From the IMG/VR virus record IMGVR_UViG_3300028592_000004, positions 124,001 to 188,000 of that record: a DNA stretch of 64,000 nt; one strand, written 5' to 3'. Positions 29,946 through 60,189 of this stretch are shown piece by piece. The notes beneath the pieces are model-generated. The model saw nothing but the letters and a program-made list of their open reading frames with translations. It searched no databases and was not told where the DNA came from. A program made the position numbers and the translations under genes. Position 1 is the stretch's first letter; each line of letters opens with the position of its first letter.

Positions 29946-30320
29946 TTACGCCGCGCCGTTCAGCAGGGCCTGCTGGATGGCGGCAGCGCTCTTGATGAGC
30001 TTCGGATCGGCCTTGATCGCCTGGGCGGCGAACTTTTCGGCCTCGTCGACCTGCGACTGCTGTCCGACCGCTTCGAACAGACCAGCGTAGGCTTCGTCCA
30101 GGAGGGATCCGCGAGCAGCCGCTTGCTTGGTCTGCTCGGTGACGTGCTGCTGGAACAGCATGTCGCCAATCTGGAGCAGCTTCCCACGGTCGGCACTGGA
30201 CATCTTCTCGACCGGAACACCGTGGCTGGCCAACTTCTGGAAGAAGGCCGGTTGGGCAACCGTTGCGAAGATATGGTCTCGTGCGGCCTGCTGCTCAGAT
30301 GCGGCGTTCGTATCGGCCAT
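29946..30320 (-). CDS. Small Ala-rich internal head protein with K-x-A motifs
   Basis: KLA, KQA, KFA, KSA in 124 aa; follows MCP. Confidence 0.55.
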   Translation of the reverse strand: MADTNAASEQQAARDHIFATVAQPAFFQKLASHGVPVEKMSSADRGKLLQIGDMLFQQHVTEQTKQAAARGSLLDEAYAGLFEAVGQQSQVDEAEKFAAQAIKADPKLIKSAAAIQQALLNGAA

Positions 30321-30351
30321 TGAAGACGTCTCCGATTGGAGGATTGAAACG

Positions 30352-30382
30352 GAAGAAAACCCGGCAGCCGAAGCTGCCGGGT
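30352..30382 (-). terminator. Rho-independent terminator after MCP
   Basis: ACCCGGCAGC-TTCG-GCTGCCGGGT (cUUCGg tetraloop) followed by TTTCTTC. Confidence 0.85.
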
Positions 30383-30399
30383 GTCTCGGGGAGAATCGC

Positions 30400-31326
30400 T
30401 TACGCGAAGTCGGCCCGGGCGAGACCGCCGGTGTGGCCGATCGTGGCCCCGCCGGTCTGGTAGCAGAAGAACTCGATCATCCAGTACTCACGCTTGACGT
30501 ACATGGCAACCGGTTCGAGTTCGAAGTGCTTCCCGATGAACTTCGGGTTGGCGAACATGTACATCGAGTCGTCGGGAACCAAATCCCGCTTGATCGTCAC
30601 GATGAAGTTCAGACCCATGAAGTTCCGCTCGGTCCAGCCGTTCTTCAGGATGTCCTGGGAGATATCACCCCCCATTTCATCCCGGCCCCACTTCTCCATC
30701 TCCTTCGCGGTGACCATGTTGATCAGAGCGGTCTCGGCTTCGAGCCGGGACGGCGTCCGATTCATGATCTTCTTCGCGTCCTGGACGGAGTCGCGGGTGA
30801 TACCGCCGCTGACGGTTTCCCACTGGGGGACGCCGGAAGCGTAGGTGTTCTGGTCGGCACCGACGAGCGCGGTGTTGACGGCCGCGAGGAACTTGGAGTC
30901 CTCCTCTGCCATCATGTCCTTGAGGGAGTTGTCACTCAGCACCTGCCGAATGTCCATCTCCCACGTGCGCAGTTCGTCGACGTCCTTCGAGAACCGCGGC
31001 GTCACGATACGCTGGAACGTGACCAGGTAGCGGGGACCGCGGATGTAGACGCCGATCGGGTTCGTGGCGAACGGCACGCTGATCGACATCGGCGAGCCGG
31101 GTTCCTTGTCGATGACCTTCGAGGGCTTGTCCGTGTAGACCTGCCGATCGAGCTCATCGTTGGTGATGGTGAGCGGCGGCATGATCTTGCGATAGAAGCC
31201 GTCTTCACGCATCGTCGTCCGGGTGAAGTCGTTGACCGCGTCAGCGGCCTGCTTCTCCATCCCAGGGGTCCGCAGGTGCTCGAAGAACCGTTCGTTGAGC
31301 AGCTGCGTTTCAGAACGAGTGGCCAT
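30400..31326 (-). CDS. Major capsid protein (HK97-fold, putative)
   Basis: 308 aa; protease-scaffold-decoration-MCP order; strong RBS; terminator after; short N-terminal segment ending EKQA. Confidence 0.8.
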   Translation of the reverse strand: MATRSETQLLNERFFEHLRTPGMEKQAADAVNDFTRTTMREDGFYRKIMPPLTITNDELDRQVYTDKPSKVIDKEPGSPMSISVPFATNPIGVYIRGPRYLVTFQRIVTPRFSKDVDELRTWEMDIRQVLSDNSLKDMMAEEDSKFLAAVNTALVGADQNTYASGVPQWETVSGGITRDSVQDAKKIMNRTPSRLEAETALINMVTAKEMEKWGRDEMGGDISQDILKNGWTERNFMGLNFIVTIKRDLVPDDSMYMFANPKFIGKHFELEPVAMYVKREYWMIEFFCYQTGGATIGHTGGLARADFA

Positions 31327-31333
31327 GTGGAAA

Positions 31334-31349
31334 CACACCTCCGTGTGTG
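31334..31349 (-). promoter_or_regulatory. CsrA/RsmA-type hairpin at the MCP RBS
   Basis: CACAC-ACGGAG-GTGTG. Confidence 0.6.
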
Positions 31350-31395
31350 ATTGTTGGGGATCAGGGTTTGCCCGATCGCTTATCCCGGGGCGGGA

Positions 31396-31980: not shown

Positions 31981-32039
31981 GAGGAGAAACACCTCCGTGT
32001 GATGTTGTTGAACAGTCCGTGTTCGTTCTCAGCAGGGCC

Positions 32040-32441
32040 TTAGCCCATGATCGCCTGAGCGAACTTGTCCCAGTGAGCGGGAACGCCCGGGGTGCGACTG
32101 GGAGCACTCCCCTGGCTGGTTCCGAGGGCCGGCTTGTTGGGAGCCGAGGCCGTCTTTTCCTGCACGGTGCGATCCGCCATCCGCACCATGACTTCGAAGG
32201 CCCGCGTCGGATCTTCCTGAAAGACCCGCGTCATGGCCTGCTTTTCGTTTTCGGCGATGAACCCGCCGCGGGCCAGGGCGTCAACCGCCCGGGGGATCTC
32301 CGCGGCGACCTTCTTCTGGAAGGTCTCCAGGTTCTGTTCGGCCGCGAGGCCCTTGCCGATCGCCTCGCTGGCGATCTGGGCCATCTTCGTGACCTTCTGT
32401 GCCGGCGACAGGTCCGCCGGCTCGGTCTTCGTTGCGCTCAT
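32040..32441 (-). CDS. Putative scaffold-associated/internal head protein
   Basis: Helical, five K-x-A motifs in 133 aa. Confidence 0.55.
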   Translation of the reverse strand: MSATKTEPADLSPAQKVTKMAQIASEAIGKGLAAEQNLETFQKKVAAEIPRAVDALARGGFIAENEKQAMTRVFQEDPTRAFEVMVRMADRTVQEKTASAPNKPALGTSQGSAPSRTPGVPAHWDKFAQAIMG

Positions 32442-32504
32442 CGTGTCAGTCTCCGAGTACCGTCTGCAGTGCAGCGGGTTGGGTTGAGGTTGAGGACGGG
32501 AGGA

Positions 32505-33866
32505 TTAGGACAGTTCGGCCAGCATCCGCCGGCAGTCCGCCCGCATCTGGGCCTGCTTGTTGTTGGCCGGCGCCCGGAATTCGAACTTGCCCGCCTTCCG
32601 GAAGGCGTTGACCTGATCGGCGAGCGTGCGGAAGTCGATGCTGGCGTACTTCGTGCCAGCCGCCTTCTGCCCCATTGCACCGAGCTGATCAGCTCCCTGT
32701 CCGTTTTCCAGCAGCGCGGCGATGAGCTGCATCAGCAGTTCCTGCTGACCAGCCCCCGGACCGGCCGGAGCCATGTCGGCCAGCCCACCCATCGTGTCCG
32801 GAGCGCCGCCCATCGGGCCTCCGCCCATCCCGCCACCCATCGGAGCACCACCCATCGGGGCGCCTCCGCCAGCGGCCAGGGGATCCCCGCCACCACCGGC
32901 AGCCATCGGATCCATCGCCGGAGCGCCGCCACCAGCCATTGCCGCCAGCGGGTCACCTGCGGGGGCACCCGTTGCGGCCGGCGGGGCTCCGCTCGACGCG
33001 CCACCCTCGGCCGGGGCACCGGTTCCGCCCGAGGATCCCTTGTCCGAGCTGCCCGCTTCGCTGGCGCCCGAATCTTCATCGCCCGGCTTGTCGTGGTCTT
33101 CGCCTTCGCTCGCACCGTCGTCCGCAGCCTGCTTGGCCTTGGCGAACTCAGCGAGGTAGTTGGCGGTGAGATCCGCGGCCAGGTGAGCTTCCTTGATCGT
33201 CTGGGCGACGAACGCCTGTGCCAGGTCGTCTTCGCTCAGGTCGTTCTGCCCGAGCATCGCTGCCGCTTCGTAGCCGGCTTCAGCGGCCGACTTCGTCGAT
33301 GCGGGCGGCGACTTGCCGGGAGCCGCGGCTCCCGTGGACGTCGGGGCGGTCGAAGCCGCCTGCTTGTTGAGCCGACCGTTCGCAACGTCGGCCAGGACGT
33401 CGTTGGCGACTTCCTTGAAGGCCGAGGCGAGCTTGGTCAGCGTCCACGAGCCGTACTTTTCGCCGTCGTCGGTCTTGGCCGGATGCGAGGTGCCCGGGTC
33501 GTCCTTGTCGCCCTTGTAGTCGTCTTCGACGCTGGGGTCTTCGCCGGTGGAGGACTGGGAGGTCCCCTTGTTCGGCTGGACTTCGTCCTGACGGTCGCCG
33601 ACTTCCGGAACGCTGTCCGGCGACATGCTGCCCTGGGGCCGCTTCTTTTCGTCAGCGGAGTTCTCCGAGGAACGGAAGCCTTCCTTCGCGTCCTGGAGCC
33701 CGTCTTCCGCCTTCGCGGTCGGATGCGAGCTCTGTCCGGAGTGCTCGCCGGGTTCGCTGATCGGGTTGGCCGACTTGACCGCGGCCGACTTCGTCGTGCC
33801 GACCCGGATCTCTTCGAGCACGGCTTCGATGCCAGCGCTCAACGTACTCTTCTGGGTTTGAGCCAT
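32505..33866 (-). CDS. Putative capsid scaffolding / prohead core protein
   Basis: Acidic, low-complexity, many K-x-A motifs; between protease and MCP; AAGGAG RBS before MAQTQK. Confidence 0.65.
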   Translation of the reverse strand: MAQTQKSTLSAGIEAVLEEIRVGTTKSAAVKSANPISEPGEHSGQSSHPTAKAEDGLQDAKEGFRSSENSADEKKRPQGSMSPDSVPEVGDRQDEVQPNKGTSQSSTGEDPSVEDDYKGDKDDPGTSHPAKTDDGEKYGSWTLTKLASAFKEVANDVLADVANGRLNKQAASTAPTSTGAAAPGKSPPASTKSAAEAGYEAAAMLGQNDLSEDDLAQAFVAQTIKEAHLAADLTANYLAEFAKAKQAADDGASEGEDHDKPGDEDSGASEAGSSDKGSSGGTGAPAEGGASSGAPPAATGAPAGDPLAAMAGGGAPAMDPMAAGGGGDPLAAGGGAPMGGAPMGGGMGGGPMGGAPDTMGGLADMAPAGPGAGQQELLMQLIAALLENGQGADQLGAMGQKAAGTKYASIDFRTLADQVNAFRKAGKFEFRAPANNKQAQMRADCRRMLAELS

Positions 33867-33924
33867 CGCTCGTGTCACTCCTTGACTTGTGCTTGGTCAG
33901 CATCCTGCGCCAGACCCACAGCGA

Positions 33925-35367
33925 TCAGACTACATAATGCTGACGAATTGACGAAGTTGCAATACCCGCGAAATCGTGGGCTTCAGTTTTGATCACCGCA
34001 AGCGCGGCAATCTTGTAGAGAGCGTACTGCCGAGCCAGCATGTCATCCGTCTCGTTGGCAGCCGCTTCCTTCACCGTTGAGAGCGTATCGGGATTCACGC
34101 CGCGAATGGAAGCGCGGGTGGCGCGATCGCGCACAACGGAGGGCTCAACACCGAAGGCTTGCTTCATGCGCAGTGCCCAGCGATCCAGCTCCACGCCACA
34201 AGCGCGGGACGGGACGAAGGGATTCGAAGCGAGTTTTTCGGTGACGTCGTCCGACAGCAGCATCCGGCGGAAGATTCCGGGCAGACGCGACTGAACGGAC
34301 GAGGCGACCTCTGCAGCGATCTTCTCGTTTCCGGTGGCCAGGGTCAGGAATTCCTGAACCGGCAGCACAATCCGGTGGCGAGCGAGCGCACACAGGGCTT
34401 CTTTCATCAAGCTGCTCGAATTGCCGAGGTTCGGCATTTCGAACGGCAGGCGGACCGCGGCGGAGAATGCCAGGTCGGAACCGTGGCGCTGCCCGTTGTC
34501 GAGGTCCGCGAGGATCGAGGCAATCTTGATCTGGTCGACAGCAGCTTGCGGCGCGTCTTCCAGCAGAAGGGCCAGCGGGAGGGTCAGCCCCATCCGTTCG
34601 GCCAGCTCTGCTCCGCCAACGACGCGGCCTTCGGCAGCCTTTTCCAGGACACCGAAGGCGTAGGCGATGCGATCTGCCGGGCGCCACACGTGGCTGATGT
34701 CGAAGTGCCGGGGATTCGGGTTGTCGGCGTGGAGGATGTGACCGTCCGATGCCATCTTCGCGATGTTGTGCTGCAGCCCGCCGTACTTGCAGTTCGACTC
34801 GTCGCAGTAGTCTTCCCGGGTACGGGCCTTGTTGCCGCAGCCGGAACAGACGTCGTGATCGATCCGGCAGGCCATGCTCCAGGGGATCTCTTTCCCGCTG
34901 GCGATCTTCTCCAGCTCCTTGTCGGCAACAAGCCCGCCGTTGAGTGAAGCGACTTTCTCGTCCCCGTTCAGGCCGACCAACAGCTCGATGCGGTGCACCG
35001 GATCGTGGTAGGCCGACTTGATGACGCGGCCGTAGGACTTTTCCGGATCCTTGTTCTGGTGATCCCGGTACACCCGAGCGTACTTCTCGAAGGTGTTGTG
35101 CGTCGCCCGATTCGTGGCCTCCCGGAAGCCGTCGCCGTTGCGGTTCGGGCCGTAGTACTCCGTCGAGCCGATCGCCGCGAGATACAGCGGGATCTCGTTC
35201 TTGGCGAGCTTGACCGATCCGAGTGCGTCAACGATCTCGTGGCTCCCGAACTTTAGGAAGTCAGCGCGGTCGTTGCCGATCAGCCCGCGGCTCGACATCT
35301 TCACCATGCAGGTGACAGGCTTGCCTTGGAAGTCGAACGAATCGGGTCGAATGATCTTCAGGTGCAT
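33925..35367 (-). CDS. Prohead (maturation) protease with Zn-ribbon
   Basis: NRNGDGF..., YRDH (His), WSMAC (Ser), CSGC..YC..C, FDIS.V..PAD; directly upstream of scaffold and MCP. Confidence 0.75.
   Translation of the reverse strand: MHLKIIRPDSFDFQGKPVTCMVKMSSRGLIGNDRADFLKFGSHEIVDALGSVKLAKNEIPLYLAAIGSTEYYGPNRNGDGFREATNRATHNTFEKYARVYRDHQNKDPEKSYGRVIKSAYHDPVHRIELLVGLNGDEKVASLNGGLVADKELEKIASGKEIPWSMACRIDHDVCSGCGNKARTREDYCDESNCKYGGLQHNIAKMASDGHILHADNPNPRHFDISHVWRPADRIAYAFGVLEKAAEGRVVGGAELAERMGLTLPLALLLEDAPQAAVDQIKIASILADLDNGQRHGSDLAFSAAVRLPFEMPNLGNSSSLMKEALCALARHRIVLPVQEFLTLATGNEKIAAEVASSVQSRLPGIFRRMLLSDDVTEKLASNPFVPSRACGVELDRWALRMKQAFGVEPSVVRDRATRASIRGVNPDTLSTVKEAAANETDDMLARQYALYKIAALAVIKTEAHDFAGIATSSIRQHYVV
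33934..33962 (-). promoter_or_regulatory. Sigma70-like promoter for the scaffold-capsid genes
   Basis: TTGCAA-17 nt-CATTAT in an AT-rich patch at the 3' end of the protease gene. Confidence 0.55.
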
Positions 35368-35370
35368 GGG

Positions 35371-36336
35371 TTACTGTCCTGCGGGCATTACGACGTCGGA
35401 ACCGAACATGTTGGCGGGAAGCTGCTTTTGAGCCCAGTCCCCGGCCAGCATGCCGAGGATCCCCGCGGGGGCGTTTCGCATGAGGGATCCCATCAAGCCC
35501 CGCGCTGGCAGCTGCTTGAGAACACTGCCGGCCGTCGGCGCTCCGGAAAGGATCGCCGGGTTCTGGGCCATCCGGCCGAGCCGCGCGTTGCCGACGAACG
35601 GCATTCCCTTGCCCCGTCCGATATGGTCCGCCATTTCATCGTACAGACCCATCTGGGCTGTCGAGGGACCCGGTGAGCCAGTCGGATGGTACAGGTCGCG
35701 GATGATGTTCTGGACCGCAGTCGGAGCCTGGCCCGGAGCGACGGTCTGTTTTCCGGCGACGTACGTCGACAGGTTCTCTCCGACGCGGCGATTCACCAGC
35801 GGGTTGAAGCGGCCACCGACCGTGTTTGCGGCGTGCTGGGCGACAACGCCCGCGCCGGCGCCGAGCATCGGTCCGCCGTACGCCTTCAGTTGCTTCCCAA
35901 CGCTCGGCTGCGGAAGGTTCGGGTCGAAGGAGGTCGTGACCCCCAGGGCGTTCGTGACCGGGGCAGCGACAGTTTTTGCCGCAGAGACCATGTTGTCGAC
36001 CGGGGAGAAGTTGGCGCTCTCCTCGATCGCCTTGTTGTAGAGCTCGTTCTTGCCGGAGTCCGGAACGTTGTTGCCCATCAAGGACAGACCGCCGCCAATG
36101 GCACCGCCCGCCAGGGCTCCCGTGAGCGCCGAGGCGAGCGGATTCTTGCGACGTTTCCCGAACATCCCGAGACCGAGGCCACCCAACCCGCCGACGCCCG
36201 CGCCGATGAGTGCGTTCTGGAGGAGCTGGTCGCCCTTCTTGACGAAACTCCCGACGAAGCGACTGACGACGGCCGTCTTGACGAGGAACTCGGCGGCTTC
36301 CTGGGGCGTCTTCTCAAGCAGCGAAATCGGAACCAC
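35371..36336 (-). CDS. Glycine-zipper internal virion / ejection protein (putative)
   Basis: GAGVGGLGGLGLG and GALAGGAIGGG segments; no Cys. Confidence 0.55.
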   Translation of the reverse strand: MVPISLLEKTPQEAAEFLVKTAVVSRFVGSFVKKGDQLLQNALIGAGVGGLGGLGLGMFGKRRKNPLASALTGALAGGAIGGGLSLMGNNVPDSGKNELYNKAIEESANFSPVDNMVSAAKTVAAPVTNALGVTTSFDPNLPQPSVGKQLKAYGGPMLGAGAGVVAQHAANTVGGRFNPLVNRRVGENLSTYVAGKQTVAPGQAPTAVQNIIRDLYHPTGSPGPSTAQMGLYDEMADHIGRGKGMPFVGNARLGRMAQNPAILSGAPTAGSVLKQLPARGLMGSLMRNAPAGILGMLAGDWAQKQLPANMFGSDVVMPAGQ

Positions 36337-37603
36337 CGGAACCTCCGTTGAGCTTGCTCAGCTGACCTTCCATCTTGATCGCCTGCTCGACTTCGAAGGG
36401 GTCGAGGGAACCCTGGGAGAGCTGCTTTCGCAGCATCGCCTGGACGGCCAGCGGGTGCTGAGCGGTCCGAGGAGCGATCTGGCTGAGGTTGTTGTAGGCG
36501 TTCGTGACCTCGAACGGGTCGTAACCGCTGACGACTTCGTCATTGGCCAGCAGGTCGTGCAGCATCGACTGCGTCGAGATGTCCTGCATCTTCTGCTCGT
36601 GCTCCGGGGAGCCGATGGCCTGCATCTGCTTTTGGACGAGCTTGTCCTTGTCCGGCGGAGCGATGCCACGAGCGATCGAGCCCACGACGTCGCGGGCCAT
36701 GTTCGCTCCCATGAACGGGATGATGTTGGCGACCTTCTCCAGCGGATCGATCAGGCCGTGAGTCAGCGGAGCCTTCCCGGTCAGCGGGATCATCTCTTCA
36801 TCGGTCAGGATGACGTGCGTCTCCATCGCGAGCTTGACGGCCTCGTCCGCGGCGATGGCACTGTGTGCCGTATCGGCCAGCTTCTGGAGCGTGCGATACG
36901 GCTCACGCTTGGCGTCGAACTGCTGCCACTCCGGCAGTGCCGCAGCCTTTGCAAAGTGCGGGTGCGAGGCTGCCACACGCTTCAGCAGCAGCACCGGGGC
37001 GCCGGGCATCCGAGCCTCAGCCATTTTCACGGCCGTGGCGTAGGCCGCTGGATGAGCGCCAGCGAACCAGACTGCCAGGTCGTCCAGGCCGTGGGCGAGT
37101 GCGGTCTTGTAGCCGGACGCGTGGCGGCGGAGGAGCTCGATGTTCTGCTCCCGATTCCGGATTCGCTGCTGGGCTTGCTTGACGGTCATTCCCGTCGCCG
37201 CCGGCCGGGGCTGCAGCGGGATGTGCAGTTCGGCGGACTTTGTCATCGTCGGCGTGTCGAGCCAGGACGGGCTGCGACTGTACTCGGCGGAGACGAGGGT
37301 CTCGTACTCCCGAGCCGCGGCAGTCTTGATCTCGGGCGTCAGCCGGCGGACGATCTCTTCCGGATCGGCCATTGCGAAGACCGCGGCCTTTTCGAGAACC
37401 GAGTTCCCTTGCTGCCGGACGTAGGTCGATTCCGCGACGTTGTAGGCGTTCGCGAGGACCCGCGCATGACCGATCGGGAGCTGGAGCTCCTGAGCAATCT
37501 TCACGACAGCGTCGGTTGGGTCCGATCCCTCGCTGACGGCCGCAGTGACGCTCTGAACCGCGTCGAGAATGCGGTTCTCAGCTTCCTTGCTCATTCGCTC
37601 CAT
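36314..37603 (-). CDS. Internal head protein with K-x-A-rich propeptide (putative)
   Basis: 12 K-x-A motifs in the N-terminal ~70%; no Cys. Confidence 0.6.
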   Translation of the reverse strand: MERMSKEAENRILDAVQSVTAAVSEGSDPTDAVVKIAQELQLPIGHARVLANAYNVAESTYVRQQGNSVLEKAAVFAMADPEEIVRRLTPEIKTAAAREYETLVSAEYSRSPSWLDTPTMTKSAELHIPLQPRPAATGMTVKQAQQRIRNREQNIELLRRHASGYKTALAHGLDDLAVWFAGAHPAAYATAVKMAEARMPGAPVLLLKRVAASHPHFAKAAALPEWQQFDAKREPYRTLQKLADTAHSAIAADEAVKLAMETHVILTDEEMIPLTGKAPLTHGLIDPLEKVANIIPFMGANMARDVVGSIARGIAPPDKDKLVQKQMQAIGSPEHEQKMQDISTQSMLHDLLANDEVVSGYDPFEVTNAYNNLSQIAPRTAQHPLAVQAMLRKQLSQGSLDPFEVEQAIKMEGQLSKLNGGSGGSDFAA

Positions 37604-38582: not shown

Positions 38583-38608
38583 TACGATTCCAATCCGCGG
38601 GTATTGGA

Positions 38609-39022: not shown

Positions 39023-39024
39023 CG

Positions 39025-41484
39025 TTATCCTTCCGTGGACAGGCTCAGATCGATGCGCTGGTCGGGCACCGCCTGGATGGCCTTCTGCTTGAGGAACAGG
39101 ACCAGCTCACCCGTCTGGTCGAAGGTGCTGGAAAACGCATTCTCCAGCTCGTTCATTTCGTTTTCGCCGTACCGCTCCTGGAACTTTTCCGGGTTCCAGT
39201 AGAACACGAGCAGCAGCCGGCCAATCCGGTCCATCCCCTTCATAATCGGACCGATATGCCGGTCGACCAGCTGGTCGTCGCGGGTCGACTTGAGCAGCGT
39301 CGAGATGACGCTGGTGTCGAAGACTTCCCGCTGACCGCTCTGGGCAGCCTGCTGCACGTACTGCATCATGCCCGGTTCGGGACCCTGAAGCTGGTACGCG
39401 TCCCGCGAAGCCTGATGATTCGGCTCCATTGAGTCAACGGGAAGCATGTCGGCCTGGGAACCATAGGTCGGCATGTTGCCGCCCATGACCCCGTCGAACC
39501 GGGCGTCCATCGGCGGAATGGACGGGGCGGTGACCGTCTGCTCGACCCCGTACGGGTTGGCGTACTTGATGCGGAGGTTCAGACCGCGGTGATGCAGGTT
39601 GAAGGCGACATCGGCGCGCTTCACCAGCTCGCGGGCCGTCGCTTCGCGGAGGCCGTGGTTGACGATCAGGTCGAAGCAAGCCTGCTTGGCCGGCATTCGC
39701 TGGTTGTTGATGACCGCTTCGCAGCCATCGCACCAGATCTTGAGCTGACTGGCTTGCTTCATCATCTCGAACTGGACGTCGAGCAGGTTCCCCGGGCGGA
39801 TCGGCGGCGGATCGCTTTCGCCTGTGTCGGCGCCGGCCATGCACGGGCTACAGTCCTTGCCATACTGCTCTTCCCAGGACTTCCGGTGCCGGACCTTGAT
39901 GATCTTCGTGTCGTTGGGGACGGTGACATCGCCCTTGTTCGACCGGAAGGTGATTCCCTTCTTGTCCGACAGGTGCAGGCGTTCCCCATCGGTGTACTTG
40001 TCGTAGCCCTCATGATCGTCGTAGGGCATGCCGGAGTAGTTGCGGCCGAGATTGAAGGCCGGATCTTCCTTCGAGCAGTACGAGTCGAAGTTGACTTCCC
40101 ACGACTTGCCGGCATCGGACGTTCCGAGGGACCGATCAACGGTGAACGGGAGCGTGGCGCTCCCGGTTGCGTTGATGGCGATGTACTCGCTGCGATCGCT
40201 CGACTCAGGCGACGAATCGCTCTGCTCTTCGACCCACTTCTCGAATTCCGACTTCGGGTAGTACTTCGTCGTGTAGAGATAGGAGGCGTGGATGTTGAGC
40301 CAGTTACGCTCGCTGGCACCACTCCCCGCGCGGATCACGGTCGCGAACCGCTTCCGGCCGTTGCCACTCATCGGGTGGATGATGACGACGCACTTCTCGA
40401 CGGAGCCTGGCTTGACCAGGACGTCATACAGCCCGGTCTCGGTCGGGGTCTCGAACGTTTCCTTTTCGCGAACTTCGTAGACCTTGGAGATCTCGTCGTC
40501 GTCGCGGTCGTCCACGACGAGGGAGCCCTCCGCGGCCAACTTCTCCCGCTGCTCTTCGGTGAGCAGGAGGGACGGCTGGGCGAAGTTGTTGAAGCGGTGG
40601 ATCGAAACCGAGCCCCGCTTGACGAGCCCGTCCAGCAGCGACTTCGGGTTGCCGCTCTGGGATTCTGAGCGAACGACCTTCGGCGAGGGCGGCGCGGAGC
40701 CGGTGACCTTGTATTCGCAGCCGGCGGTCTTCATCGGCGACCGCGACTTCGCCTCTTCGAACATGTCGTAGAGGGAGTCGTGCGTGTACTTGTCCCGGAC
40801 CGGGAAGCGATCGACGGACTGCTTGATGTGCGCGAAGGCGTCAGCGAACTCCTCCGGCGCGTAGAACTTGTCGAGCTGGGACTGCAGATCCGGGAACTTG
40901 TCTGCCGCCATCTTCAGGAGATCAAGCATCTCCAGACCGCCATCCTTGAGCAGCTCGGGCAGATGGACCGTCCCGTCGAGCGGATTGGAGGTGGCGTGCT
41001 TGTAGAGGCAGCCCACGGCGTCGAGCGCCCAGGGCGGCATCGCCGAGCCGTACTTCGAGGGTGACTGGGTGAACTGCGACAGGGAGGGGCGCAGCGTCTG
41101 CCGCGAGGCCTCGCCCTTGTCGATCCCGTTGCCGAGGATGATCGGCTTCTTGTTCAGGATGTAGTTGATCCAGTTCTCTTTCAGCGGCACGAACATGTCC
41201 TGGTTCTTCAGGTACAGGAGTTCGTGCCCCTTCAGGTCCCCGTCGATGAAGAACACCGGAGCGTAGAGCCACTGGGAGCCGACCTTAAACGCGAAAATCC
41301 CGACAGCGCGGGTATCATCTTCGTTCCGGTCGATGAGCTGGAAGCCGACCTCGTAGTCGAGGAGCTTCGGGGCCTTGTCCGTCAAGTAGGAGTGGGCCAG
41401 CGACGAAAATGCCTGCTCGAACGGGACGTCGTTCCCGGCTTCCGAGGCCCGCTTGATGTTCCGAGGCGTCAAAGTTTGAGGCAT
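39025..41484 (-). CDS. Large head-module protein of unknown function
   Basis: 819 aa from MPQTLT; several K-x-A motifs between globular-looking blocks. Confidence 0.65.
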   Translation of the reverse strand: MPQTLTPRNIKRASEAGNDVPFEQAFSSLAHSYLTDKAPKLLDYEVGFQLIDRNEDDTRAVGIFAFKVGSQWLYAPVFFIDGDLKGHELLYLKNQDMFVPLKENWINYILNKKPIILGNGIDKGEASRQTLRPSLSQFTQSPSKYGSAMPPWALDAVGCLYKHATSNPLDGTVHLPELLKDGGLEMLDLLKMAADKFPDLQSQLDKFYAPEEFADAFAHIKQSVDRFPVRDKYTHDSLYDMFEEAKSRSPMKTAGCEYKVTGSAPPSPKVVRSESQSGNPKSLLDGLVKRGSVSIHRFNNFAQPSLLLTEEQREKLAAEGSLVVDDRDDDEISKVYEVREKETFETPTETGLYDVLVKPGSVEKCVVIIHPMSGNGRKRFATVIRAGSGASERNWLNIHASYLYTTKYYPKSEFEKWVEEQSDSSPESSDRSEYIAINATGSATLPFTVDRSLGTSDAGKSWEVNFDSYCSKEDPAFNLGRNYSGMPYDDHEGYDKYTDGERLHLSDKKGITFRSNKGDVTVPNDTKIIKVRHRKSWEEQYGKDCSPCMAGADTGESDPPPIRPGNLLDVQFEMMKQASQLKIWCDGCEAVINNQRMPAKQACFDLIVNHGLREATARELVKRADVAFNLHHRGLNLRIKYANPYGVEQTVTAPSIPPMDARFDGVMGGNMPTYGSQADMLPVDSMEPNHQASRDAYQLQGPEPGMMQYVQQAAQSGQREVFDTSVISTLLKSTRDDQLVDRHIGPIMKGMDRIGRLLLVFYWNPEKFQERYGENEMNELENAFSSTFDQTGELVLFLKQKAIQAVPDQRIDLSLSTEG

Positions 41485-41531
41485 TGCACCCATCCGTGGT
41501 GAATTGCGTGGCGGTCCGTGCCGTGAGGCCC

Positions 41532-41559
41532 ATCGTATCAGTTCGACAACGACGGGCAA
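41532..41559 (-). promoter_or_regulatory. Sigma70-like promoter with extended -10
   Basis: TTGCCC-16 nt-TACGAT with TG at -15/-14. Confidence 0.5.
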
Positions 41560-43483: not shown

Positions 43484-43725
43484 CAGAACCCTACGTCGGA
43501 CAGCGTGGGTGCGTCACGGTGACGGATTTGCACTTCCGATCGGTTGAGGCCCAGGTTACCCAGTACCTGCTCGAACCGAGGATCTTCAAAGGTGTAGGCC
43601 TGGACCAGGCCGTCTGCGAGTTCGATCGCAACCGCCACGATGGTTCCCTGGCGGTTGCGAATCACGACGCGACGAGCTTCTGCGACCTGGGGCTCAGCCA
43701 GCTTTTGGAAAAACTCGATCTGCAT
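43483..43725 (-). CDS. Hypothetical protein
   Basis: 80 aa, AAGGAG RBS, TGATG coupling to the beta'C gene. Confidence 0.6.
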   Translation of the reverse strand: MQIEFFQKLAEPQVAEARRVVIRNRQGTIVAVAIELADGLVQAYTFEDPRFEQVLGNLGLNRSEVQIRHRDAPTLSDVGF

Positions 43726-52135: not shown

Positions 52136-52139
52136 CGCA

Positions 52140-52153
52140 AGTCCTCCGTGACT
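52140..52153 (-). promoter_or_regulatory. CsrA/RsmA-type hairpin at RBS
   Basis: AGTC-ACGGAG-GACT. Confidence 0.6.
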
Positions 52154-52190
52154 GAGAAACATCCCTGTGGTCGCACTGTATCGACCGAGA

Positions 52191-55785: not shown

Positions 55786-55814
55786 GTTGTACCCCGAATG
55801 GACCGGCCACGGAA
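55786..55814 (-). promoter_or_regulatory. Sigma70-like promoter for the envelope/protease cassette
   Basis: TTCCGT-17 nt-TACAAC in an intergenic gap. Confidence 0.4.
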
Positions 55815-55825
55815 GCCTCATTCCC

Positions 55826-56824: not shown

Positions 56825-57135
56825 TCGGAATCCCTCCTGTATCCGAGTCGGTACAAAATACGGGCCAGGTCGGTCGCCACAGTGGCGCACCATTCCTCCG
56901 ACCTGTGCCAGTCTGCGGCGTGCAGGACCTCATGGATGATGACGTCCAGCTCTCGCTCGCCCGAGATGGCGGTCGAGATCACGATCTCACGCTTCTTGAG
57001 ATCGGAAGAAGAGAATGGGTGCTGGGTCTTGGCCTCACCCGTCGTGAACCCATCGAGATTACGGAGATACTTGCGGACGAACCGCCAGCGCTTCCCAAAA
57101 ATGATGACCTGCTTCAGCACTCGTCCACAATCCAT
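56821..57135 (-). CDS. Small HExxH (minimal zincin-like) protein
   Basis: IIHEVLHA...SEE; ATGA coupling to the phosphoesterase. Confidence 0.65.
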   Translation of the reverse strand: MDCGRVLKQVIIFGKRWRFVRKYLRNLDGFTTGEAKTQHPFSSSDLKKREIVISTAISGERELDVIIHEVLHAADWHRSEEWCATVATDLARILYRLGYRRDSE

Positions 57136-57157
57136 GTGTTGGAGGCAGTCGGATCGG

Positions 57158-59512
57158 TCAGTCGAAGGCGGCGCTGATGGCACCGGTCAACAACCCGCCC
57201 CAGAGGCCCGCTTGCTGCAGGCCCACCTGGGCCTCGGGATTGAGGCCCGCTAGGGCTCCCATTGTTTTACCCAGAAGCAACCCACCGAGAAATCCCCCAG
57301 CCCCGCTGAAGGCAACGGTCTTGGCGATGTCGAAAGGCGAAACGGAGGGCTTTCCACCGCTCCCCAGCGAGGCGGCGACGAGCGTACCGCTCGCGGCTGC
57401 AGCGACTTGCGCTGGCGTGCCACCGAAGTTCGAGCCGGGCCGTGCGGCGTCATTCCAGATCACACTCCCGAAGGCGTCGACGGGGATATTCGACAGGAAC
57501 ATTGTCCCCGTCATGTCCTCCGCGGCGTTGGTTTTCGTCCGACCGGACCAGCCGAAGTCGTCGGCCGGCATCTCGGAACCCATCCCAGACAGGTTCGAGT
57601 TCCACCCGTGCGGCGTCTTGAGACCCCAGTACAAACCCGGAGCAGCGCCCAGGCCGGCGCCCAGGAGCCCCAGCGTGCGTCGCATCCGCTTGCCGGAGAA
57701 GTACTGCTCCGGAAGCATGTTGTCCATCAGATAGCCGGCACCGTAGCCCAGGCCGGCTCCCAGAGCTCCACCAACCAGCGTGCTGGAGAGCGGGCTCGGC
57801 CCACCGAGCGGCTTGTTGACCTTCGACCACATGTCCGAAATCCCCTCGAACATCGCGCCCTGCTTGAACATCGTCCAGCCCGGCTCGTCGGCCGGGATCG
57901 TACTGACCAGGCCCTTCTCCGGATGGACGAACCAGCAGCCCTCTGCCTCCGCATACTTCACGACCAGCGGCGCCGCCTGCTCGTACAGAGCTCGCACCCG
58001 GGCGGGGACTTCCCGCCAACTGAGGTGTTCCAGCTCGTCGATCGCGCTCGCTTCCTTCTGGTTGCGCTGTCCGATCTCCTTCAACAGATCCCGGAACTTC
58101 ATGTTGATCTCTTCCTTCTGCTCGGCCAGACGCCGCAGGTGATAGTCCGCTCCAGACCGATCATCGGTCAGGCCGAGGAACCGTTCCAGAGAGGATGGCT
58201 CCCGAGGGCGGGACAGGAAGTTCTGGATGAGGACGTTCCGCTGGTCTGTCGGAAGGTAGCCGTGACTATCGTGACGGATCCCGCGGCCTTTGACCTGAGT
58301 ATCGCGAGCCTCGTTCCAGTGCGGATCCAGGATCTGCATCAGCCGAGTGCCACGGAGCGAGATCCCTTCCGAGCCGGCGGGACCGGCGAGCAGCACCGGA
58401 GCCAACCCGTTGTTGTAGCTCTCAATAATCCGCTTCCGCTCCAGGTCGGCGATACCGCCGTGGAAGAGGCCGTAGGGGATCTTGTCTCGCTCCAGGGCCG
58501 CGGCGTAGGGACGGAGGCCGGCGTCAATGAAGTTCGAGTAGACGAGCGCTCGGCTCTTCGGGTTCTTCGCCATCTGCTCCTTGAGGAGCTTATAGGCCAG
58601 CTGCAGCTTGGGCGAGGAATCGAACGCGGCCAACGGGTCCGGGTTCGACATGAACGGGAACATCGACAGCCCGATCTGTCGCGGTCCGGTCAGGAAGGAC
58701 GTCATCCGCTTCCGTTCGAGGGCGGAGAGCGGGAAGTTGTTCTGCAGCTTGTAGCGCAGGACCCAGGGGATCGAGTTCCAGAACGACCGATACGCGGTCG
58801 TCTGCTCGTCCGACATGTCAACTTCGTGCATCTCGTCTGTGCGATCCACGAGCGGCTTATCGGGAGCGTGGTAGTCGACGTGGCCCGCCAGCAGATCTTC
58901 CAGCCGGCCGACGTTCTTCGGCTCCATCACCTGGCCGGGCGTGACACCGAACAACGAGGCGAAGAAACCCGGGCGAACCGTCTTCTGCTTGATGAACTGG
59001 TGTGTGAACGCGTCCGGCGTGATCCGCTCGCCGGTCAGGATCGACATCGGCGCCGCGAGATCGGACGGGTGATTGACGATCGGCGAGCCCGAGAGGAGGT
59101 AAACGTGCTTGGCCTTGTTCGCCAGGTCCGTCACTGCCTGCGTCCGCTGAGACTCAGGGTTCCGGATCCGGTGAGCCTCATCGACGATCAGAGTGTCCGC
59201 GGCCGGGGCCTTGCCCGCCGTCGCGCCCTCGTAGGACACAACGTTGCCCATCAGCGAGCCGTCAGTGAACTTGGCCTGCTCCTTCGCAAAGTTGGGACGC
59301 AGTGCCGCTGGCACGATAGCCGTGTACGGCTTGCCGGCGTTCTCTGCCGCAGCGATCGAGGCCAGAGTCTTCCCGCTCCCCACGTCGTGGAAGAGGAGCA
59401 TGCGGGACTCTTCGTCCTTCCCGGTCTGGGCGATCCGCTTCTGTTGAGGCTGCAGCTCGACGCCCGGCAGGAGGGCCGCGATCTTCAACTGGTCAACGAA
59501 GTCGGCGTCCAT
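57158..59512 (-). CDS. SF2 (SNF2-like) helicase/translocase fused to a C-terminal glycine-zipper region
   Basis: GSGKT, DEAH, SGSP, EGISL, Q..GRGIR; C-terminal GGALGAGLGYGAG and similar segments. Confidence 0.85.
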   Translation of the reverse strand: MDADFVDQLKIAALLPGVELQPQQKRIAQTGKDEESRMLLFHDVGSGKTLASIAAAENAGKPYTAIVPAALRPNFAKEQAKFTDGSLMGNVVSYEGATAGKAPAADTLIVDEAHRIRNPESQRTQAVTDLANKAKHVYLLSGSPIVNHPSDLAAPMSILTGERITPDAFTHQFIKQKTVRPGFFASLFGVTPGQVMEPKNVGRLEDLLAGHVDYHAPDKPLVDRTDEMHEVDMSDEQTTAYRSFWNSIPWVLRYKLQNNFPLSALERKRMTSFLTGPRQIGLSMFPFMSNPDPLAAFDSSPKLQLAYKLLKEQMAKNPKSRALVYSNFIDAGLRPYAAALERDKIPYGLFHGGIADLERKRIIESYNNGLAPVLLAGPAGSEGISLRGTRLMQILDPHWNEARDTQVKGRGIRHDSHGYLPTDQRNVLIQNFLSRPREPSSLERFLGLTDDRSGADYHLRRLAEQKEEINMKFRDLLKEIGQRNQKEASAIDELEHLSWREVPARVRALYEQAAPLVVKYAEAEGCWFVHPEKGLVSTIPADEPGWTMFKQGAMFEGISDMWSKVNKPLGGPSPLSSTLVGGALGAGLGYGAGYLMDNMLPEQYFSGKRMRRTLGLLGAGLGAAPGLYWGLKTPHGWNSNLSGMGSEMPADDFGWSGRTKTNAAEDMTGTMFLSNIPVDAFGSVIWNDAARPGSNFGGTPAQVAAAASGTLVAASLGSGGKPSVSPFDIAKTVAFSGAGGFLGGLLLGKTMGALAGLNPEAQVGLQQAGLWGGLLTGAISAAFD

Positions 59513-60189
59513 GCCAGCACCCTCTCCAGCTCCATCAGAGGCTTGGCCGAGGACGTTTTCTCCGCGGCCCAAATGCAACTCGGACAGTCGTGGTCGACGA
59601 CGTGCCGCTCATTGTGGGAGCAGCGACACCGGGTCTCGTGCCCGCACTTATGTTGAAAGATCCCGTGCGCTGACGCTGCCTTCGCGACGTCGCTGTTCTC
59701 CTGCAGGATCTTCTTCTTCCGGACCGCGCAGGTGATGTGGAAATCGTACTCGTTGTTCTTGGGGCGTGCTGACAGCCCGTATGACTTGCGAAGTTTCTCC
59801 AGATCCGGAGACTTCACTTTCAGGAACCAGACCCGCGACATTTCCTTCCAGCTCGTTGGCGCGACCTCTTGCAGCGCCCCAAGCTGGTAGTGGAACTCCC
59901 TTCCCCGCTCGACGATGACGTCGATGCCGCCAATCTGCTCGATCTCTTCCGGACGCATGACGCTGATATGCGCATTCAGCGGTTCATTGTTGTGTGGCCC
60001 GGGCAATTCTGCGCCAAGGACCCGCATCGCCGAGAAGACACCCCTGACTAGATCATTCGGGACTGTCAGCAACAGCCATCCACTCTGAGACGCAATCAGC
60101 CGGCCCGCCAAAACGGGGGCATCGACCGCGTCACCCGCGGACTTCAAGAGGTAGCCGGACGCTTCGCCTAGTTGAAAGTCTGACGTCAC
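59485..60189 (-). CDS. 2H phosphoesterase family protein with C-terminal Cys/His cluster
   Basis: Two HxS/T motifs (AHISV, FHITC) about 80 aa apart; GTG start after GAGGA. Confidence 0.75.
   Translation of the reverse strand: MTSDFQLGEASGYLLKSAGDAVDAPVLAGRLIASQSGWLLLTVPNDLVRGVFSAMRVLGAELPGPHNNEPLNAHISVMRPEEIEQIGGIDVIVERGREFHYQLGALQEVAPTSWKEMSRVWFLKVKSPDLEKLRKSYGLSARPKNNEYDFHITCAVRKKKILQENSDVAKAASAHGIFQHKCGHETRCRCSHNERHVVDHDCPSCIWAAEKTSSAKPLMELERVLAWTPTSLTS

What the first reader, a model, noticed from the sequence alone, without database searches (positions are those of the whole stretch)
29946..60189. K-x-A code: pervasive putative prohead-protease cleavage motif marking head cargo
Seen: in the 429-aa protein 12 of the first 15 lysines are K-x-A and none of the last 7. 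In the protease's own C-terminal half 8 of 9 lysines are K-x-A. The MCP has EKQA-A about 20 residues in. The scaffold, 124-, 133-, 819-, 266-, 359- and 127-aa proteins carry many copies, often K-x-A-[A/S]. The motif also brackets enzyme domains (helicase LKIA...QKEA; 2H LKSA...AKAA). Established: T4 and phiKZ prohead proteases cut many head proteins at short x-x-E motifs, and the structurally related herpes assemblin cuts V-x-A/S. Inference: a K-x-A-specific protease removes propeptides and frees cargo, so the motif predicts the internal proteome.
Basis: partly seen in the sequence, partly recalled or inferred. Interest (0 to 1): 0.85.

Follow-up and report, generated by a model that had tools for sequence, protein, structure and literature searches.

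The report
K-x-A motif code in phage head proteins

Summary
The counts are correct, and the enrichment is real for six adjacent minus-strand genes (29946-41559): 55 K-x-A against 18.5 expected (p about 5e-12). The tail module is at 0.95x, the other head-module genes at 0.8x, and everything from 41567 onward, including the helicase, 2H protein and RNAP, at 1.02x.

The pattern holds in 79 related jumbo-phage loci (GC 42-64%). The same six syntenic genes are 2.1-3.3x enriched. Site number per protein is constant while non-motif lysines track GC. R-x-A is not enriched. Sites slide within poorly conserved segments. Retained domains are depleted: the 429-aa family's C-terminal domain has 10 against 79 expected, and the MCP body has 5 against 66. 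Every MCP keeps one N-terminal site.

The 480-aa protein matches predicted structures of annotated prohead proteases and has invariant His103 and Ser164. Its catalytic core is followed by L-E-K-x-A in a disordered linker, conserved as far as Salmonella phage Arash and Bacillus phage G. Arash, Vibrio phage D69 and phage G show the same code.

Best reading: a new cleavage specificity, about Phi-[E/V/I/T]-K-x-A then [A/S], of an uncurated prohead-protease lineage. That is a new variant of the known T4/phiKZ principle. No cleavage has been shown. The claim that the motif predicts head cargo is not supported beyond the core genes.

The parts
33925..35367 (-). 480-aa prohead-protease candidate. The N-terminal catalytic domain is about residues 40-226 (nt 34690-35250), followed by a disordered linker and a C-terminal helical domain. 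14 of 26 lysines are in K-x-A.
   Evidence: Counts and shuffles. The AlphaFold model has pLDDT 82, with residues 227-261 below 50. Foldseek against BFVD matches annotated prohead and capsid-maturation proteases, phage G gp19, and phiRSL1 and PaBG proteins at E of 1e-15 to 1e-3. All 44 sampled homologs carry 10-17 K-x-A against 2.5-5.5 expected.
35059..35061 (-). His103, the candidate catalytic histidine (in YRDHxNK).
   Evidence: Invariant in 44 homologs and aligned with His in Arash gp222 and phage G gp19. Coordinates checked.
34876..34878 (-). Ser164, the candidate catalytic serine (in SMAC), followed by a cluster of five invariant Cys (C167, C174, C177, C188, C193).
   Evidence: Invariant and conserved in Arash gp222 and phage G gp19. 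Coordinates checked.
34633..34641 (-). K243-A-A245 within L-E-K-A-A, in the disordered linker just after the catalytic domain; the predicted self-processing site.
   Evidence: K-x-A is at this column in 93% of homologs, with S, A or G as the next residue. The segment has pLDDT below 50. L-E-K-x-A is conserved at the same alignment position in Arash gp222 and phage G gp19.
36314..37603 (-). 429-aa protein of unknown function (Arash gp220 shares the N-terminal part). Residues 1-292 (nt 36728-37603) hold 12 K-x-A sites 16-37 residues apart. Residues 293-429 (nt 36317-36727) hold 7 lysines and no site.
   Evidence: Across the family of 79 sequences the N-terminal part has 990 sites against 296 expected. 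The C-terminal domain has 10 against 79, and 70 of 79 sequences have none there.
32505..33878 (-). 457-aa scaffold-like protein. It lies between the protease and the MCP, is acidic, and has a lysine-free G/A/P/M-rich stretch at residues 281-400. It carries 10 K-x-A.
   Evidence: Family of 76: 775 against 369 expected, with sites clustered at residues 1-40, 121-280 and 401-440. The scaffold role is inferred from position and composition only.
32040..32441 (-). 133-aa protein; 6 of 10 lysines are in K-x-A.
   Evidence: ORFs in the same syntenic slot in 73 loci have 389 against 119 expected (3.3x), even where BLAST finds no similarity.
29946..30320 (-). 124-aa protein just downstream of the MCP; 4 of 8 lysines are in K-x-A, 3 of them followed by Ala.
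   Evidence: The syntenic slot in the related loci (85 ORFs) has 267 against 98 expected (2.7x).
39025..41559 (-). 844-aa protein (819 aa from the ATG start; Arash gp218 shares the terminal blocks); a polyprotein-like candidate. Its 9 K-x-A sites cluster at residues 36, 187-340 and 601-665.
   Evidence: In the family of 77, sites are confined to poorly conserved zones (1-40, 161-320, 601-680) and are nearly absent from conserved blocks. K36 and A38 are invariant. Four of 9 sites lie in segments with pLDDT below 50. No fold or HMM identification was obtained.
31246..31254 (-). The single K-Q-A site near the N-terminus of the major capsid protein (MCP gene 30400-31338). The predicted mature start is ADAVNDF, which would leave 281 residues.
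   Evidence: The MCP assignment is weak (phrog_2522, E 1e-5) but is supported by 30% identity to the annotated Arash MCP gp226. The site is present in 73 of 73 homologs and at the same position in Arash gp226 and Vibrio D69 protein 275. Only 5 other K-x-A occur downstream in the family, against 66 expected.
43694..44494 (-). 266-aa protein between the two RNAP genes; a borderline possible seventh member, with 4 of 9 lysines in K-x-A.
   Evidence: p = 0.04-0.06. Positional analogs in two relatives have 4 against 1.3 expected.

Best explanation
The window holds the head-morphogenesis module of an uncultured 229-kb contractile-tailed jumbo phage. The module's 480-aa protein is most likely a prohead (capsid-maturation) serine protease of an uncurated lineage that also includes phage G gp19 and Salmonella phage Arash gp222.

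K-x-A, in fuller form about [F/L/M/I]-[E/V/I/T]-K-x-A-[A/S], is most likely its substrate recognition motif. The cut is most plausibly after the Ala, which makes Lys the P3 residue, Ala P1 and Ala/Ser P1'.

If this reading is right, the protease acting inside the prohead would do the following:
- Free its own catalytic core by cutting the linker L-E-K-A-A after residue 245, and then fragment its helical C-terminal half.
- Remove about 27-31 N-terminal residues from the MCP.
- Chop the scaffold-like protein and the two small proteins.
- Degrade the first 292 residues of the 429-aa protein into peptides of 37 residues or fewer, leaving a 137-residue C-terminal domain.
- Cut the 844-aa protein into about three conserved blocks.

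Shown here:
- The motif statistics in the window.
- Clade-wide conservation of site number.
- Depletion of sites from retained domains.
- The motif copies that bracket the protease core.
- The fold resemblance to prohead proteases.

Inferred, not shown:
- That the motif is cut.
- Which enzyme cuts it.
- At which bond.
For: 1. The excess is specific. The six core genes have 55 K-x-A against 18.5 expected. Tail genes are at 0.95x, other head-module genes at 0.8x and the rest of the window at 1.02x. K-x-A is the top gap-1 residue pair for the whole window. It is the top or second pair in each enriched family.

2. The pattern is clade-wide. In 79 loci the same six syntenic genes are 2.1-3.3x enriched.

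3. It behaves like a selected short linear motif.
- Sites per protein are constant and uncorrelated with GC (rho about 0): 14.2 +/- 1.9, 12.7 +/- 1.9, 10.2 +/- 1.6 and 11.2 +/- 2.6. Non-motif lysines track GC. R-x-A is at expectation.
- Many sites are not in the same alignment column but are kept within a few columns, for example 0.00 rising to 0.84.

4. Sites are avoided where the protein should survive. The 429-aa family's C-terminal domain has 10 against 79 expected, the MCP body has 5 against 66, and the conserved blocks of the 844-aa family are nearly free of sites.

5. The placement matches known systems.
- One invariant site lies near the MCP N-terminus. It is also present in the Arash and D69 MCPs, which are only 30% identical to the window's.
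- L-E-K-x-A sits in the disordered linker after the catalytic domain, conserved out to phage G.
- A second K-x-A lies before the domain in the relatives.

6. The enzyme assignment has several supports.
- Foldseek matches predicted structures annotated as prohead protease, capsid maturation protease and COG3740.
- His103 and Ser164 are invariant, in the His-then-Ser order.
- The gene sits directly upstream of the scaffold-like gene and the MCP.
- Phage G gp19 is independently annotated as a head maturation protease and was found in virions (PMC12484599).

7. Cultured relatives show the same code.
- K-x-A is the top pair in Arash gp220 and gp225, D69 proteins 268, 271 and 273, and phage G gp19.
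- Genome-wide in Arash, the two most significant of 229 ORFs flank the protease gene.
- These Arash proteins were detected in virions (PMC10585845).

8. There is precedent. SPN3US gp245 cuts after A-X-E and has multiple motif copies inside propeptides (PMC10052503). The P3-plus-P1 logic of T4 and of herpesvirus assemblin is from my general knowledge.
Against: - No mature termini or protease assays exist for any member, so cleavage is inferred.
- The protease domain has no significant match to solved structures, to Pfam or NCBIfam, or to T4 gp21 or HK97 gp4 by hhalign.
- Several conserved K-x-A sites (K53, K95, K154) lie inside the folded catalytic domain with K or R as the next residue. Cleavage there would destroy the enzyme, so either not every K-x-A is a site or they serve late self-inactivation.
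- Many sites lie in confidently predicted helices, and only 4 of 9 sites in the 844-aa model are in low-confidence segments.
- Family-level z-scores and depletion counts are inflated by shared ancestry.
- The scissile bond cannot be told from sequence, because information is spread about evenly from position -2 to +4.
Confidence: 0.68

Rival explanations
1. K-x-A is a selected motif in these head proteins, but not a cleavage site. It could be a repeated docking motif for scaffold, capsid-interior or protease binding (a targeting signal), or a lysine-directed modification or cross-link site.
For: The statistics show selection on the motif, not proteolysis. Several invariant sites sit inside the folded protease domain and within predicted helices, where cutting seems unlikely. 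Information is spread over seven positions, as for a binding motif.
Against: - Depletion from the retained MCP body and the 429-aa C-terminal domain is expected for a destructive signal, not for a docking signal.
- The positions of single sites mirror known processing sites: the MCP N-terminus, the 844-aa N-terminus, and the linker after the catalytic core.
- No lysine-modifying enzyme is conserved in the module.
Confidence: 0.17
2. The motif is cut, but by a different enzyme: the trypsin-like protein (51233-52204) cutting after Lys, the caspase-domain protein (60802-61605), or a host protease.
For: A trypsin-like domain (Pfam E 1e-4, below the curated cut-off; phrog_9683 'protease') and a Peptidase_C14 domain (E 1e-24) are encoded in the window. 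Lys is a classic P1 residue for trypsin-like enzymes.
Against: - The trypsin-like gene has no homolog in 8 relatives that keep the code.
- It lies outside the conserved head module.
- A strict Ala two residues after the cut and a preference for A/S three residues after it are not typical of trypsin-like specificity.
- The motif brackets the 480-aa protein's own catalytic core across very distant phages, which points to self-processing.
- Caspase-family enzymes cut after Asp, Arg or Lys and have no known link to heads (general knowledge).
Confidence: 0.07
3. The excess is a by-product of composition, alanine-rich helices or internal repeats, with no motif-level function.
For: The enriched proteins are Ala-rich (12-22% Ala) and largely helical. 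Arash gp223 contains duplicated segments that each carry the motif.
Against: - Whole-protein and 40-residue block shuffles reject a composition effect.
- R-x-A is not enriched.
- Site number is constant across GC 42-64%.
- Unrelated proteins share the same extended context.
- Ala-rich neighbours are not enriched, for example the 321-aa protein with 1 against 1.9 expected.
Confidence: 0.03

Closest known systems
T4 gp21 prohead protease with its (L/I)-x-E motif, which cuts gp23, gp22, the internal proteins and gp21 itself
   Same: - A short motif with two fixed positions separated by one free residue.
- Many copies in scaffold or core proteins, which are degraded to small peptides.
- One site near the MCP N-terminus.
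- Copies that flank the protease's own core, predicting self-processing.
- The protease gene lies next to the scaffold and MCP genes.
   Different: - The fixed residues are Lys and Ala instead of hydrophobic and Glu.
- hhalign finds no detectable sequence relationship.
- The protease here has a Cys-rich insert after the Ser and a 220-residue helical C-terminal half.
- The MCP here is small (312 aa), and its predicted propeptide is about 27-31 residues.
phiKZ gp175 and SPN3US gp245 giant-phage prohead proteases with the (S/A/G)-x-E or A-X-E motif
   Same: - Jumbo phages with virion-associated multisubunit RNAP.
- Several head proteins carry propeptides that hold multiple motif copies (PMC10052503).
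- The protease self-cleaves.
- The motif can be used to predict processing.
   Different: - The motif and the protease lineage are different.
- The head module and MCP here are unrelated to those of phiKZ-like phages: 312 aa against about 750 aa (the phiKZ size is from my knowledge).
- Here only about six proteins carry a statistical signal.
Herpesvirus assemblin (serine protease cutting at (V/L)-x-A then S)
   Same: If the cut is after Ala, P1 is Ala and P1' is Ser or Ala, with P3 as the second determinant. That is the same P3/P1/P1' logic. Assemblin also releases itself from a C-terminal scaffold-like extension.
   Different: P3 is Lys rather than Val or Leu. The whole-model Foldseek search of the PDB, which holds solved assemblin structures (my knowledge), returned no significant match. 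The resemblance is functional analogy, not shown homology.
Bacillus megaphage G gp19 and Salmonella phage Arash gp222 (uncharacterised; gp19 is annotated as a head maturation protease in PMC12484599)
   Same: True homologs of the catalytic domain: 30% and 38% identity, E of 4e-16 and 3e-33. They share the His, the Ser, most of the Cys cluster and the L-E-K-x-A junction, and show K-x-A excess in themselves and their neighbours.
   Different: gp19 is only 300 aa and lacks the long helical C-terminal half. The phage G MCP has no K-x-A at all. Neither has any published cleavage data.

Membership tests
Prohead (capsid-maturation) serine proteases of the HK97 gp4 / T4 gp21 / assemblin fold | Three-dimensional fold similar to solved members | tested here: inconclusive
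   A whole-chain AlphaFold model (pLDDT 82) searched with Foldseek against the PDB gave no match with E below 0.1. The helical C-terminal half dominated the alignments.
Prohead (capsid-maturation) serine proteases of the HK97 gp4 / T4 gp21 / assemblin fold | Fold similar to predicted structures of proteins annotated as prohead proteases | tested here: met
   BFVD gave 24 matches at E of 1e-3 or better. They include proteins named prohead protease, prohead core protein serine protease and capsid maturation protease, plus phage G gp19. COG3740 and DUF2213 proteins follow at E of 2e-3 to 5e-3. The names are automatic annotations.
Prohead (capsid-maturation) serine proteases of the HK97 gp4 / T4 gp21 / assemblin fold | Conserved catalytic His followed by Ser | tested here: met
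   His103 and Ser164 are invariant in 44 homologs and conserved in Arash gp222 and phage G gp19. Their spatial proximity in the model could not be checked because no coordinates were available.
Prohead (capsid-maturation) serine proteases of the HK97 gp4 / T4 gp21 / assemblin fold | Sequence or profile membership (Pfam S77/S78/U9-type models, NCBIfam; T4 gp21, HK97 gp4) | tested here: not met
   There were no Pfam, NCBIfam or PDB-sequence hits. hhalign probability was below 1% against both T4 gp21 and HK97 gp4. The only hint is phage G gp19 against NF045541, a prohead protease/MCP fusion model, at E 0.017.
Prohead (capsid-maturation) serine proteases of the HK97 gp4 / T4 gp21 / assemblin fold | Gene placed with the scaffold and major capsid genes | tested here: met
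   The order protease, scaffold-like, 133-aa, 198-aa, MCP is conserved in 79 loci, with a similar order in Arash and phage G.
Prohead (capsid-maturation) serine proteases of the HK97 gp4 / T4 gp21 / assemblin fold | Proteolytic activity on head proteins | not testable with these tools
   This needs a recombinant enzyme assay or virion N-terminomics.
Motif-coded head-protein processing (T4 / phiKZ / SPN3US type) | A short motif over-represented in head and scaffold proteins but not in tail or replication proteins | tested here: met
   the genome-wide test in Arash is.
Motif-coded head-protein processing (T4 / phiKZ / SPN3US type) | A motif copy near the MCP N-terminus and copies in the protease itself | tested here: met
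   The MCP site is present in 73 of 73 homologs and in Arash and D69. The protease linker site is 93% conserved.
Motif-coded head-protein processing (T4 / phiKZ / SPN3US type) | Mature termini of virion proteins map to the motif | not testable with these tools
   The Arash and phage G virion proteomics were trypsin-specific searches that report only coverage.

The most novel reading that the evidence does not exclude
K-x-A followed by [A/S] is the cleavage code of a previously unrecognised, ancient prohead-protease lineage. The lineage carries a Cys-rich, Zn-ribbon-like insert, shares a self-release site L-E-K-x-A, and has an assemblin-like preference for Ala at P1. It would span the 500-kb megaphage G, 180-kb Salmonella and Vibrio phages, and hundreds of uncultured 150-230-kb jumbo phages. 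On this reading the 844-aa protein is a polyprotein cut into three virion proteins, and the code would allow propeptides to be annotated in uncultured phage genomes from sequence alone.
Probability: 0.45. Interest if true: 0.7.

Novelty: new variant of a known kind. Interest (0 to 1): 0.6.

Why it matters
Motif-directed proteolysis of head proteins is established for T4 and phiKZ-like phages, where all the motifs end in Glu. A Lys-x-Ala code tied to a protease lineage that no curated profile recognises would be a new specificity class.

It would give a sequence-only way to mark propeptides, mature capsid termini and degradable core proteins in a very large group of uncultured jumbo phages. The protease search alone returned 757 protein homologs and 218 viral contigs.

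The same code appears in cultured Salmonella phage Arash, Vibrio phage D69 and Bacillus phage G. It can therefore be tested at once with existing systems, possibly by re-searching existing mass-spectrometry data.

The depletion of the motif from retained domains is also a clean example of selection against self-destructive sites.

Tried and rejected
- **Close phage relatives.** A megablast of 20 kb against 50,697 phage genomes found nothing.
- **Annotating the head proteins.** Pfam and PHROGs gave almost nothing for the head-module proteins.
- **PDB sequence search.** Profile searches with the protease and 844-aa families gave no hits.
- **PDB fold search.** Both models gave nothing significant. 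The 844-aa model is poor (pLDDT 60), and the protein is still unidentified. It is probably not the portal, because the Arash homolog gp218 is distinct from the annotated portal gp204.
- **Known proteases.** hhalign of the protease family against T4 gp21 and HK97 gp4 found no relationship. The only match was a 6-residue chance-level hit, VSSRGL, between residues 24-29 here and the T4 catalytic-serine region.
- **Curated HMMs on cultured homologs.** Pfam and NCBIfam gave nothing significant.
- **Literature.** Searches for a K-x-A protease motif found nothing relevant.
- **The trypsin-like protein as the responsible enzyme.** Rejected, because the gene is missing in relatives that keep the code.
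- **Composition as the cause.** Rejected by global and local shuffles and by the R-x-A control.
- **Motifs bracketing the helicase and 2H domains.** Rejected: no enrichment, and the sites are not conserved.
- **Arash virion proteome as a cleavage test.** The published table gives coverage percentages only, so it cannot show cleavage.
- **Technical failures.** My first greedy ORF call by length failed at 63% GC, and I replaced it with a GC3-guided minus-strand chain. My first shuffle script timed out.

Full report
**Source and gene map.** The window is part of IMG/VR contig IMGVR_UViG_3300028592_000004, 229,210 bp. It is 63% GC, and all credible genes lie on the minus strand. No phage in a 50,697-genome collection is similar at the DNA level.
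- Positions 93-29531 encode tail and baseplate proteins: a collagen-repeat fibre, baseplate J and a DUF2345-like spike.
- Positions 29612-41559 form the head module.
- Beyond that lie two multisubunit RNA polymerase genes (a 1486-aa beta/beta' fusion and a 638-aa beta' C-terminal part), a trypsin-like protein, a metallophosphoesterase, an SNF2 helicase, a 2H phosphoesterase and a caspase-domain protein.

**Checking the observation.**
- 429-aa protein: 12 of the first 15 lysines are K-x-A and none of the last 7.
- 480-aa protein: 8 of the 9 lysines in the C-terminal half are K-x-A.
- MCP: ...EKQA|ADAVNDF.

Shuffling each protein gives p of about 5e-5 for the 480- and 429-aa proteins, 0.002-0.014 for the 133-, 844- and 457-aa proteins, and 0.07 for the 124-aa protein. 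Shuffling within 40-residue blocks keeps these results. K-x-A is the most over-represented gap-1 residue pair in the whole window.

| Group | K-x-A observed | Expected | Ratio |
|---|---|---|---|
| Six core proteins | 55 | 18.5 | 2.97 (p = 5e-12) |
| 24 tail-module proteins | 26 | 27.3 | 0.95 |
| Six other head-module proteins | 5 | 6.3 | 0.8 |
| 21 proteins from 41567 onward | 34 | 33.4 | 1.02 |

The helicase (3 against 4.3 expected), the 2H protein (2 against 1.2), both RNAP subunits and the 127/142-aa protein show nothing. The 359- and 266-aa proteins are borderline.

**Relatives.** The 480-aa protein has 757 database homologs, the nearest at about 45% identity. An alignment-based scan returned 218 viral contigs, of which 80 loci were fetched, each with up to 10 kb of flank on either side; their GC ranges from 42% to 64%. 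Synteny is conserved.

| Family or syntenic slot | K-x-A observed / expected |
|---|---|
| 844-aa family | 2.45x |
| 429-aa family | 2.7x |
| Protease family | 3.2x |
| Scaffold-like family | 2.1x |
| 133-aa slot | 3.3x |
| 124-aa slot | 2.7x |
| MCP, 198-, 334-, 321-, 105-aa, RNAP and tail families | 0.5-1.3x |

The two small slots are enriched even where BLAST sees no similarity. Eight further loci anchored on the RNAP gene show no enrichment in the helicase (1.4x), 2H protein (0.5x), RNAP (1.0-1.1x) or the 142-, 202- and 359-aa analogs. They contain no homolog of the trypsin-like gene. The 2H sites read KTG and KVD in relatives, and the helicase sites are absent.

**Evidence that the motif is selected.**
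- The number of sites per protein is nearly constant and uncorrelated with GC: protease 14.2 +/- 1.9, 429-aa family 12.7 +/- 1.9, scaffold-like 10.2 +/- 1.6, 844-aa family 11.2 +/- 2.6.
- Non-motif lysines rise in low-GC genomes, and R-x-A is at expectation.
- In poorly conserved regions the sites slide. Several window sites are matched in the same alignment column in 0-26% of homologs, but within a few columns in 60-93%.
- The extended context is [F/L/M/I]-[E/V/I/T]-K-x-A-[A/S]. Ala or Ser follows the motif in 42% of enriched-family sites and in 47% of the window's core sites, against 20% elsewhere in the window.

**Partition into cut and spared parts.**
- In the 429-aa family (79 sequences), reference residues 1-300 carry 990 sites against 296 expected. 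The C-terminal domain carries 10 against 79, and 70 sequences have none there despite about 9.6 lysines.
- In the 844-aa family the sites sit in three poorly conserved zones (1-40, 161-320, 601-680) and are almost absent from the conserved blocks. K36 and A38 are invariant.
- The MCP keeps its single N-terminal site in 73 of 73 sequences, but has only 5 further K-x-A against 66 expected.

These family counts share ancestry, so their nominal significance is overstated. Even so, four divergent MCP lineages (window, Arash, D69, phage G) together have one extra site against about 5.7 expected. That expectation is my sum of the four per-protein values in those outputs.

**The enzyme.** The AlphaFold model of the 480-aa protein (pLDDT 82) has three parts: an alpha/beta N-terminal domain (about residues 15-226), a disordered linker (227-261) and a helical C-terminal half.

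Evidence against a known protease family:
- No Pfam, NCBIfam, PDB-sequence or PDB-fold match was found.
- hhalign against T4 gp21 and HK97 gp4 is negative.

Evidence for a prohead protease:
- The model matches BFVD predicted structures annotated as prohead protease, prohead core protein serine protease and capsid maturation protease. It also matches phage G gp19 and phiRSL1 and PaBG proteins, all at E of 1e-3 or better with probability 0.98-1.0. COG3740 head maturation protease and DUF2213 proteins follow at E of 2e-3 to 5e-3.
- His103 and Ser164 are invariant, in the His-then-Ser order typical of this protease class. Five invariant Cys follow the Ser.
- A recent phage G study independently lists gp19 among the head maturation proteases and detected it in virions (PMC12484599).

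I rate the protease assignment at about 0.75-0.8.

**Motif copies bracket the catalytic core.** L-E-K-x-A lies in the disordered linker right after the domain. It is present in 93% of clade members, usually with Ser next, and at the same alignment position in Arash gp222 and phage G gp19. A second K-x-A precedes the domain in all 43 other sampled clade members, in Arash and in phage G; the window protein has K-F-G there. This is what a self-releasing protease fused to a scaffold-like tail would look like.

**Cultured relatives.** Salmonella phage Arash (181 kb) has matching synteny and homologs: gp216 (RNAP beta'), gp217 (helicase), gp218 (844-aa), gp220 (429-aa), gp222 (protease) and gp226 (MCP).

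| Arash protein | K-x-A observed | Expected | Note |
|---|---|---|---|
| gp220 | 10 | 3.0 | top gap-1 pair |
| gp225 | 7 | 1.8 | top gap-1 pair |
| gp223 | 8 | 3.0 | second pair |

- Most of these Arash sites are followed by S or A.
- Genome-wide in Arash, total K-x-A is not enriched (244 against 259). The two most significant of 229 ORFs are gp220 and gp223, and the protease ranks fifth.
- Vibrio phage D69 repeats the pattern, including the MCP N-terminal site.
- In phage G, K-x-A is the top pair in gp19 and is elevated in gp21.
- Rhodococcus phage Finch gp17 instead shows R-x-A as its top pair.
- The Arash virion proteome detected gp218 and gp220-gp226, and also the RNAP and the helicase. 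It reports only coverage from trypsin-specific searches, so it cannot show cleavage (PMC10585845).

**Mechanism.** The best-supported reading is that K-x-A is the protease's recognition motif. I place the cut after Ala for three reasons:
- The two fixed positions are spaced as P3 and P1, as in T4 (L/I-x-E), in SPN3US (A-X-E; PMC10052503) and in herpesvirus assemblin (V/L-x-A then S; stated in the finding and known to me).
- The next residue favours Ala or Ser.
- A trypsin-like cut after Lys would not explain a strict Ala two residues later.

Predicted products are an MCP of 281 residues, a 137-residue C-terminal domain of the 429-aa protein, about three blocks of the 844-aa protein, and a free protease core. 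The scaffold-like and small proteins would be fragmented.

Caveats:
- No cleavage has been shown.
- Some invariant sites lie inside the folded catalytic domain.
- Many sites are in predicted helices.
- The scissile bond is inferred.

**Comparison and novelty.** The principle is known from T4, phiKZ and SPN3US. What is new here is the motif, the protease lineage, the breadth from megaphage G to hundreds of uncultured jumbo phages, and the clear depletion from retained domains. Four literature searches found no report of such a motif. I class it as a new variant of a known kind.

**The head-cargo claim.** Enrichment flags multi-site propeptides and degradable core proteins.

Noticed in passing
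window 44518-48978 (-) and 41567-43483 (-): A 1486-aa protein fuses an RNAP beta C-terminal part (Rpb2_6) to a beta' N-terminal part (Rpb1_1, Rpb1_2). A separate 638-aa protein carries beta' domain 5. Both sit among head genes. Their Arash homologs are among the most abundant proteins in the virion proteome (PMC10585845).
   Followed up: partly
window 60802-61605 (-): A phage-encoded caspase-domain protein (Peptidase_C14, E 1e-24) of unknown role. It has a mild K-x-A excess (4 against 1.4 expected, p = 0.04).
   Followed up: no
window 51233-52204 (-): A trypsin-like protein (below the Pfam cut-off) with a hydrophobic N-terminal stretch and a Pro/Gln-rich tail. It has no homolog in 8 related loci, so it is an accessory gene of this phage.
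   Followed up: partly
window 34789-34869 (-), protease residues 167-193: Five invariant cysteines form a Zn-ribbon-like insert directly after the candidate catalytic Ser164. The insert is largely conserved in Arash gp222 and phage G gp19, which is unusual for prohead proteases.
   Followed up: partly
window 35281-35298 (-), protease residues 24-29: The conserved SSRGL stretch matches the T4 gp21 catalytic-serine region VSSRGL over 6 residues. It is not significant (hhalign probability 0.5%) and lies in the wrong order relative to the His, so it is probably chance.
   Followed up: partly
window 32679-33038 (-), scaffold-like protein residues 281-400: A lysine-free low-complexity segment rich in G, A, P and M, poorly conserved across the clade.
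   Followed up: no
window 93-1967 (-): A collagen triple-helix repeat protein (Pfam E 8e-34), presumably a tail fibre. A homolog in locus L075 is 1306 aa.
   Followed up: no
L094 7836-10805 (Rhodococcus phage Finch gp17): A 989-aa protein with a protease-like N-terminal part has R-x-A (17 against 6.5 expected) rather than K-x-A as its top gapped pair. This may be a drift of specificity in a distant branch.
   Followed up: no
L098 35466-36335 and L095 2528-5821 (Arash gp242 and gp4): Two structural proteins outside the Arash head module show a mild K-x-A excess (8 against 3.5 and 14 against 8.9 expected). They are candidates for further substrates.
   Followed up: no
window 44518-48978 (-), RNAP residue 96: A K-x-A about 96 residues into the large RNAP subunit is kept in all 8 relatives examined. 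The protein is well conserved overall, so this alone does not indicate a propeptide.
   Followed up: partly
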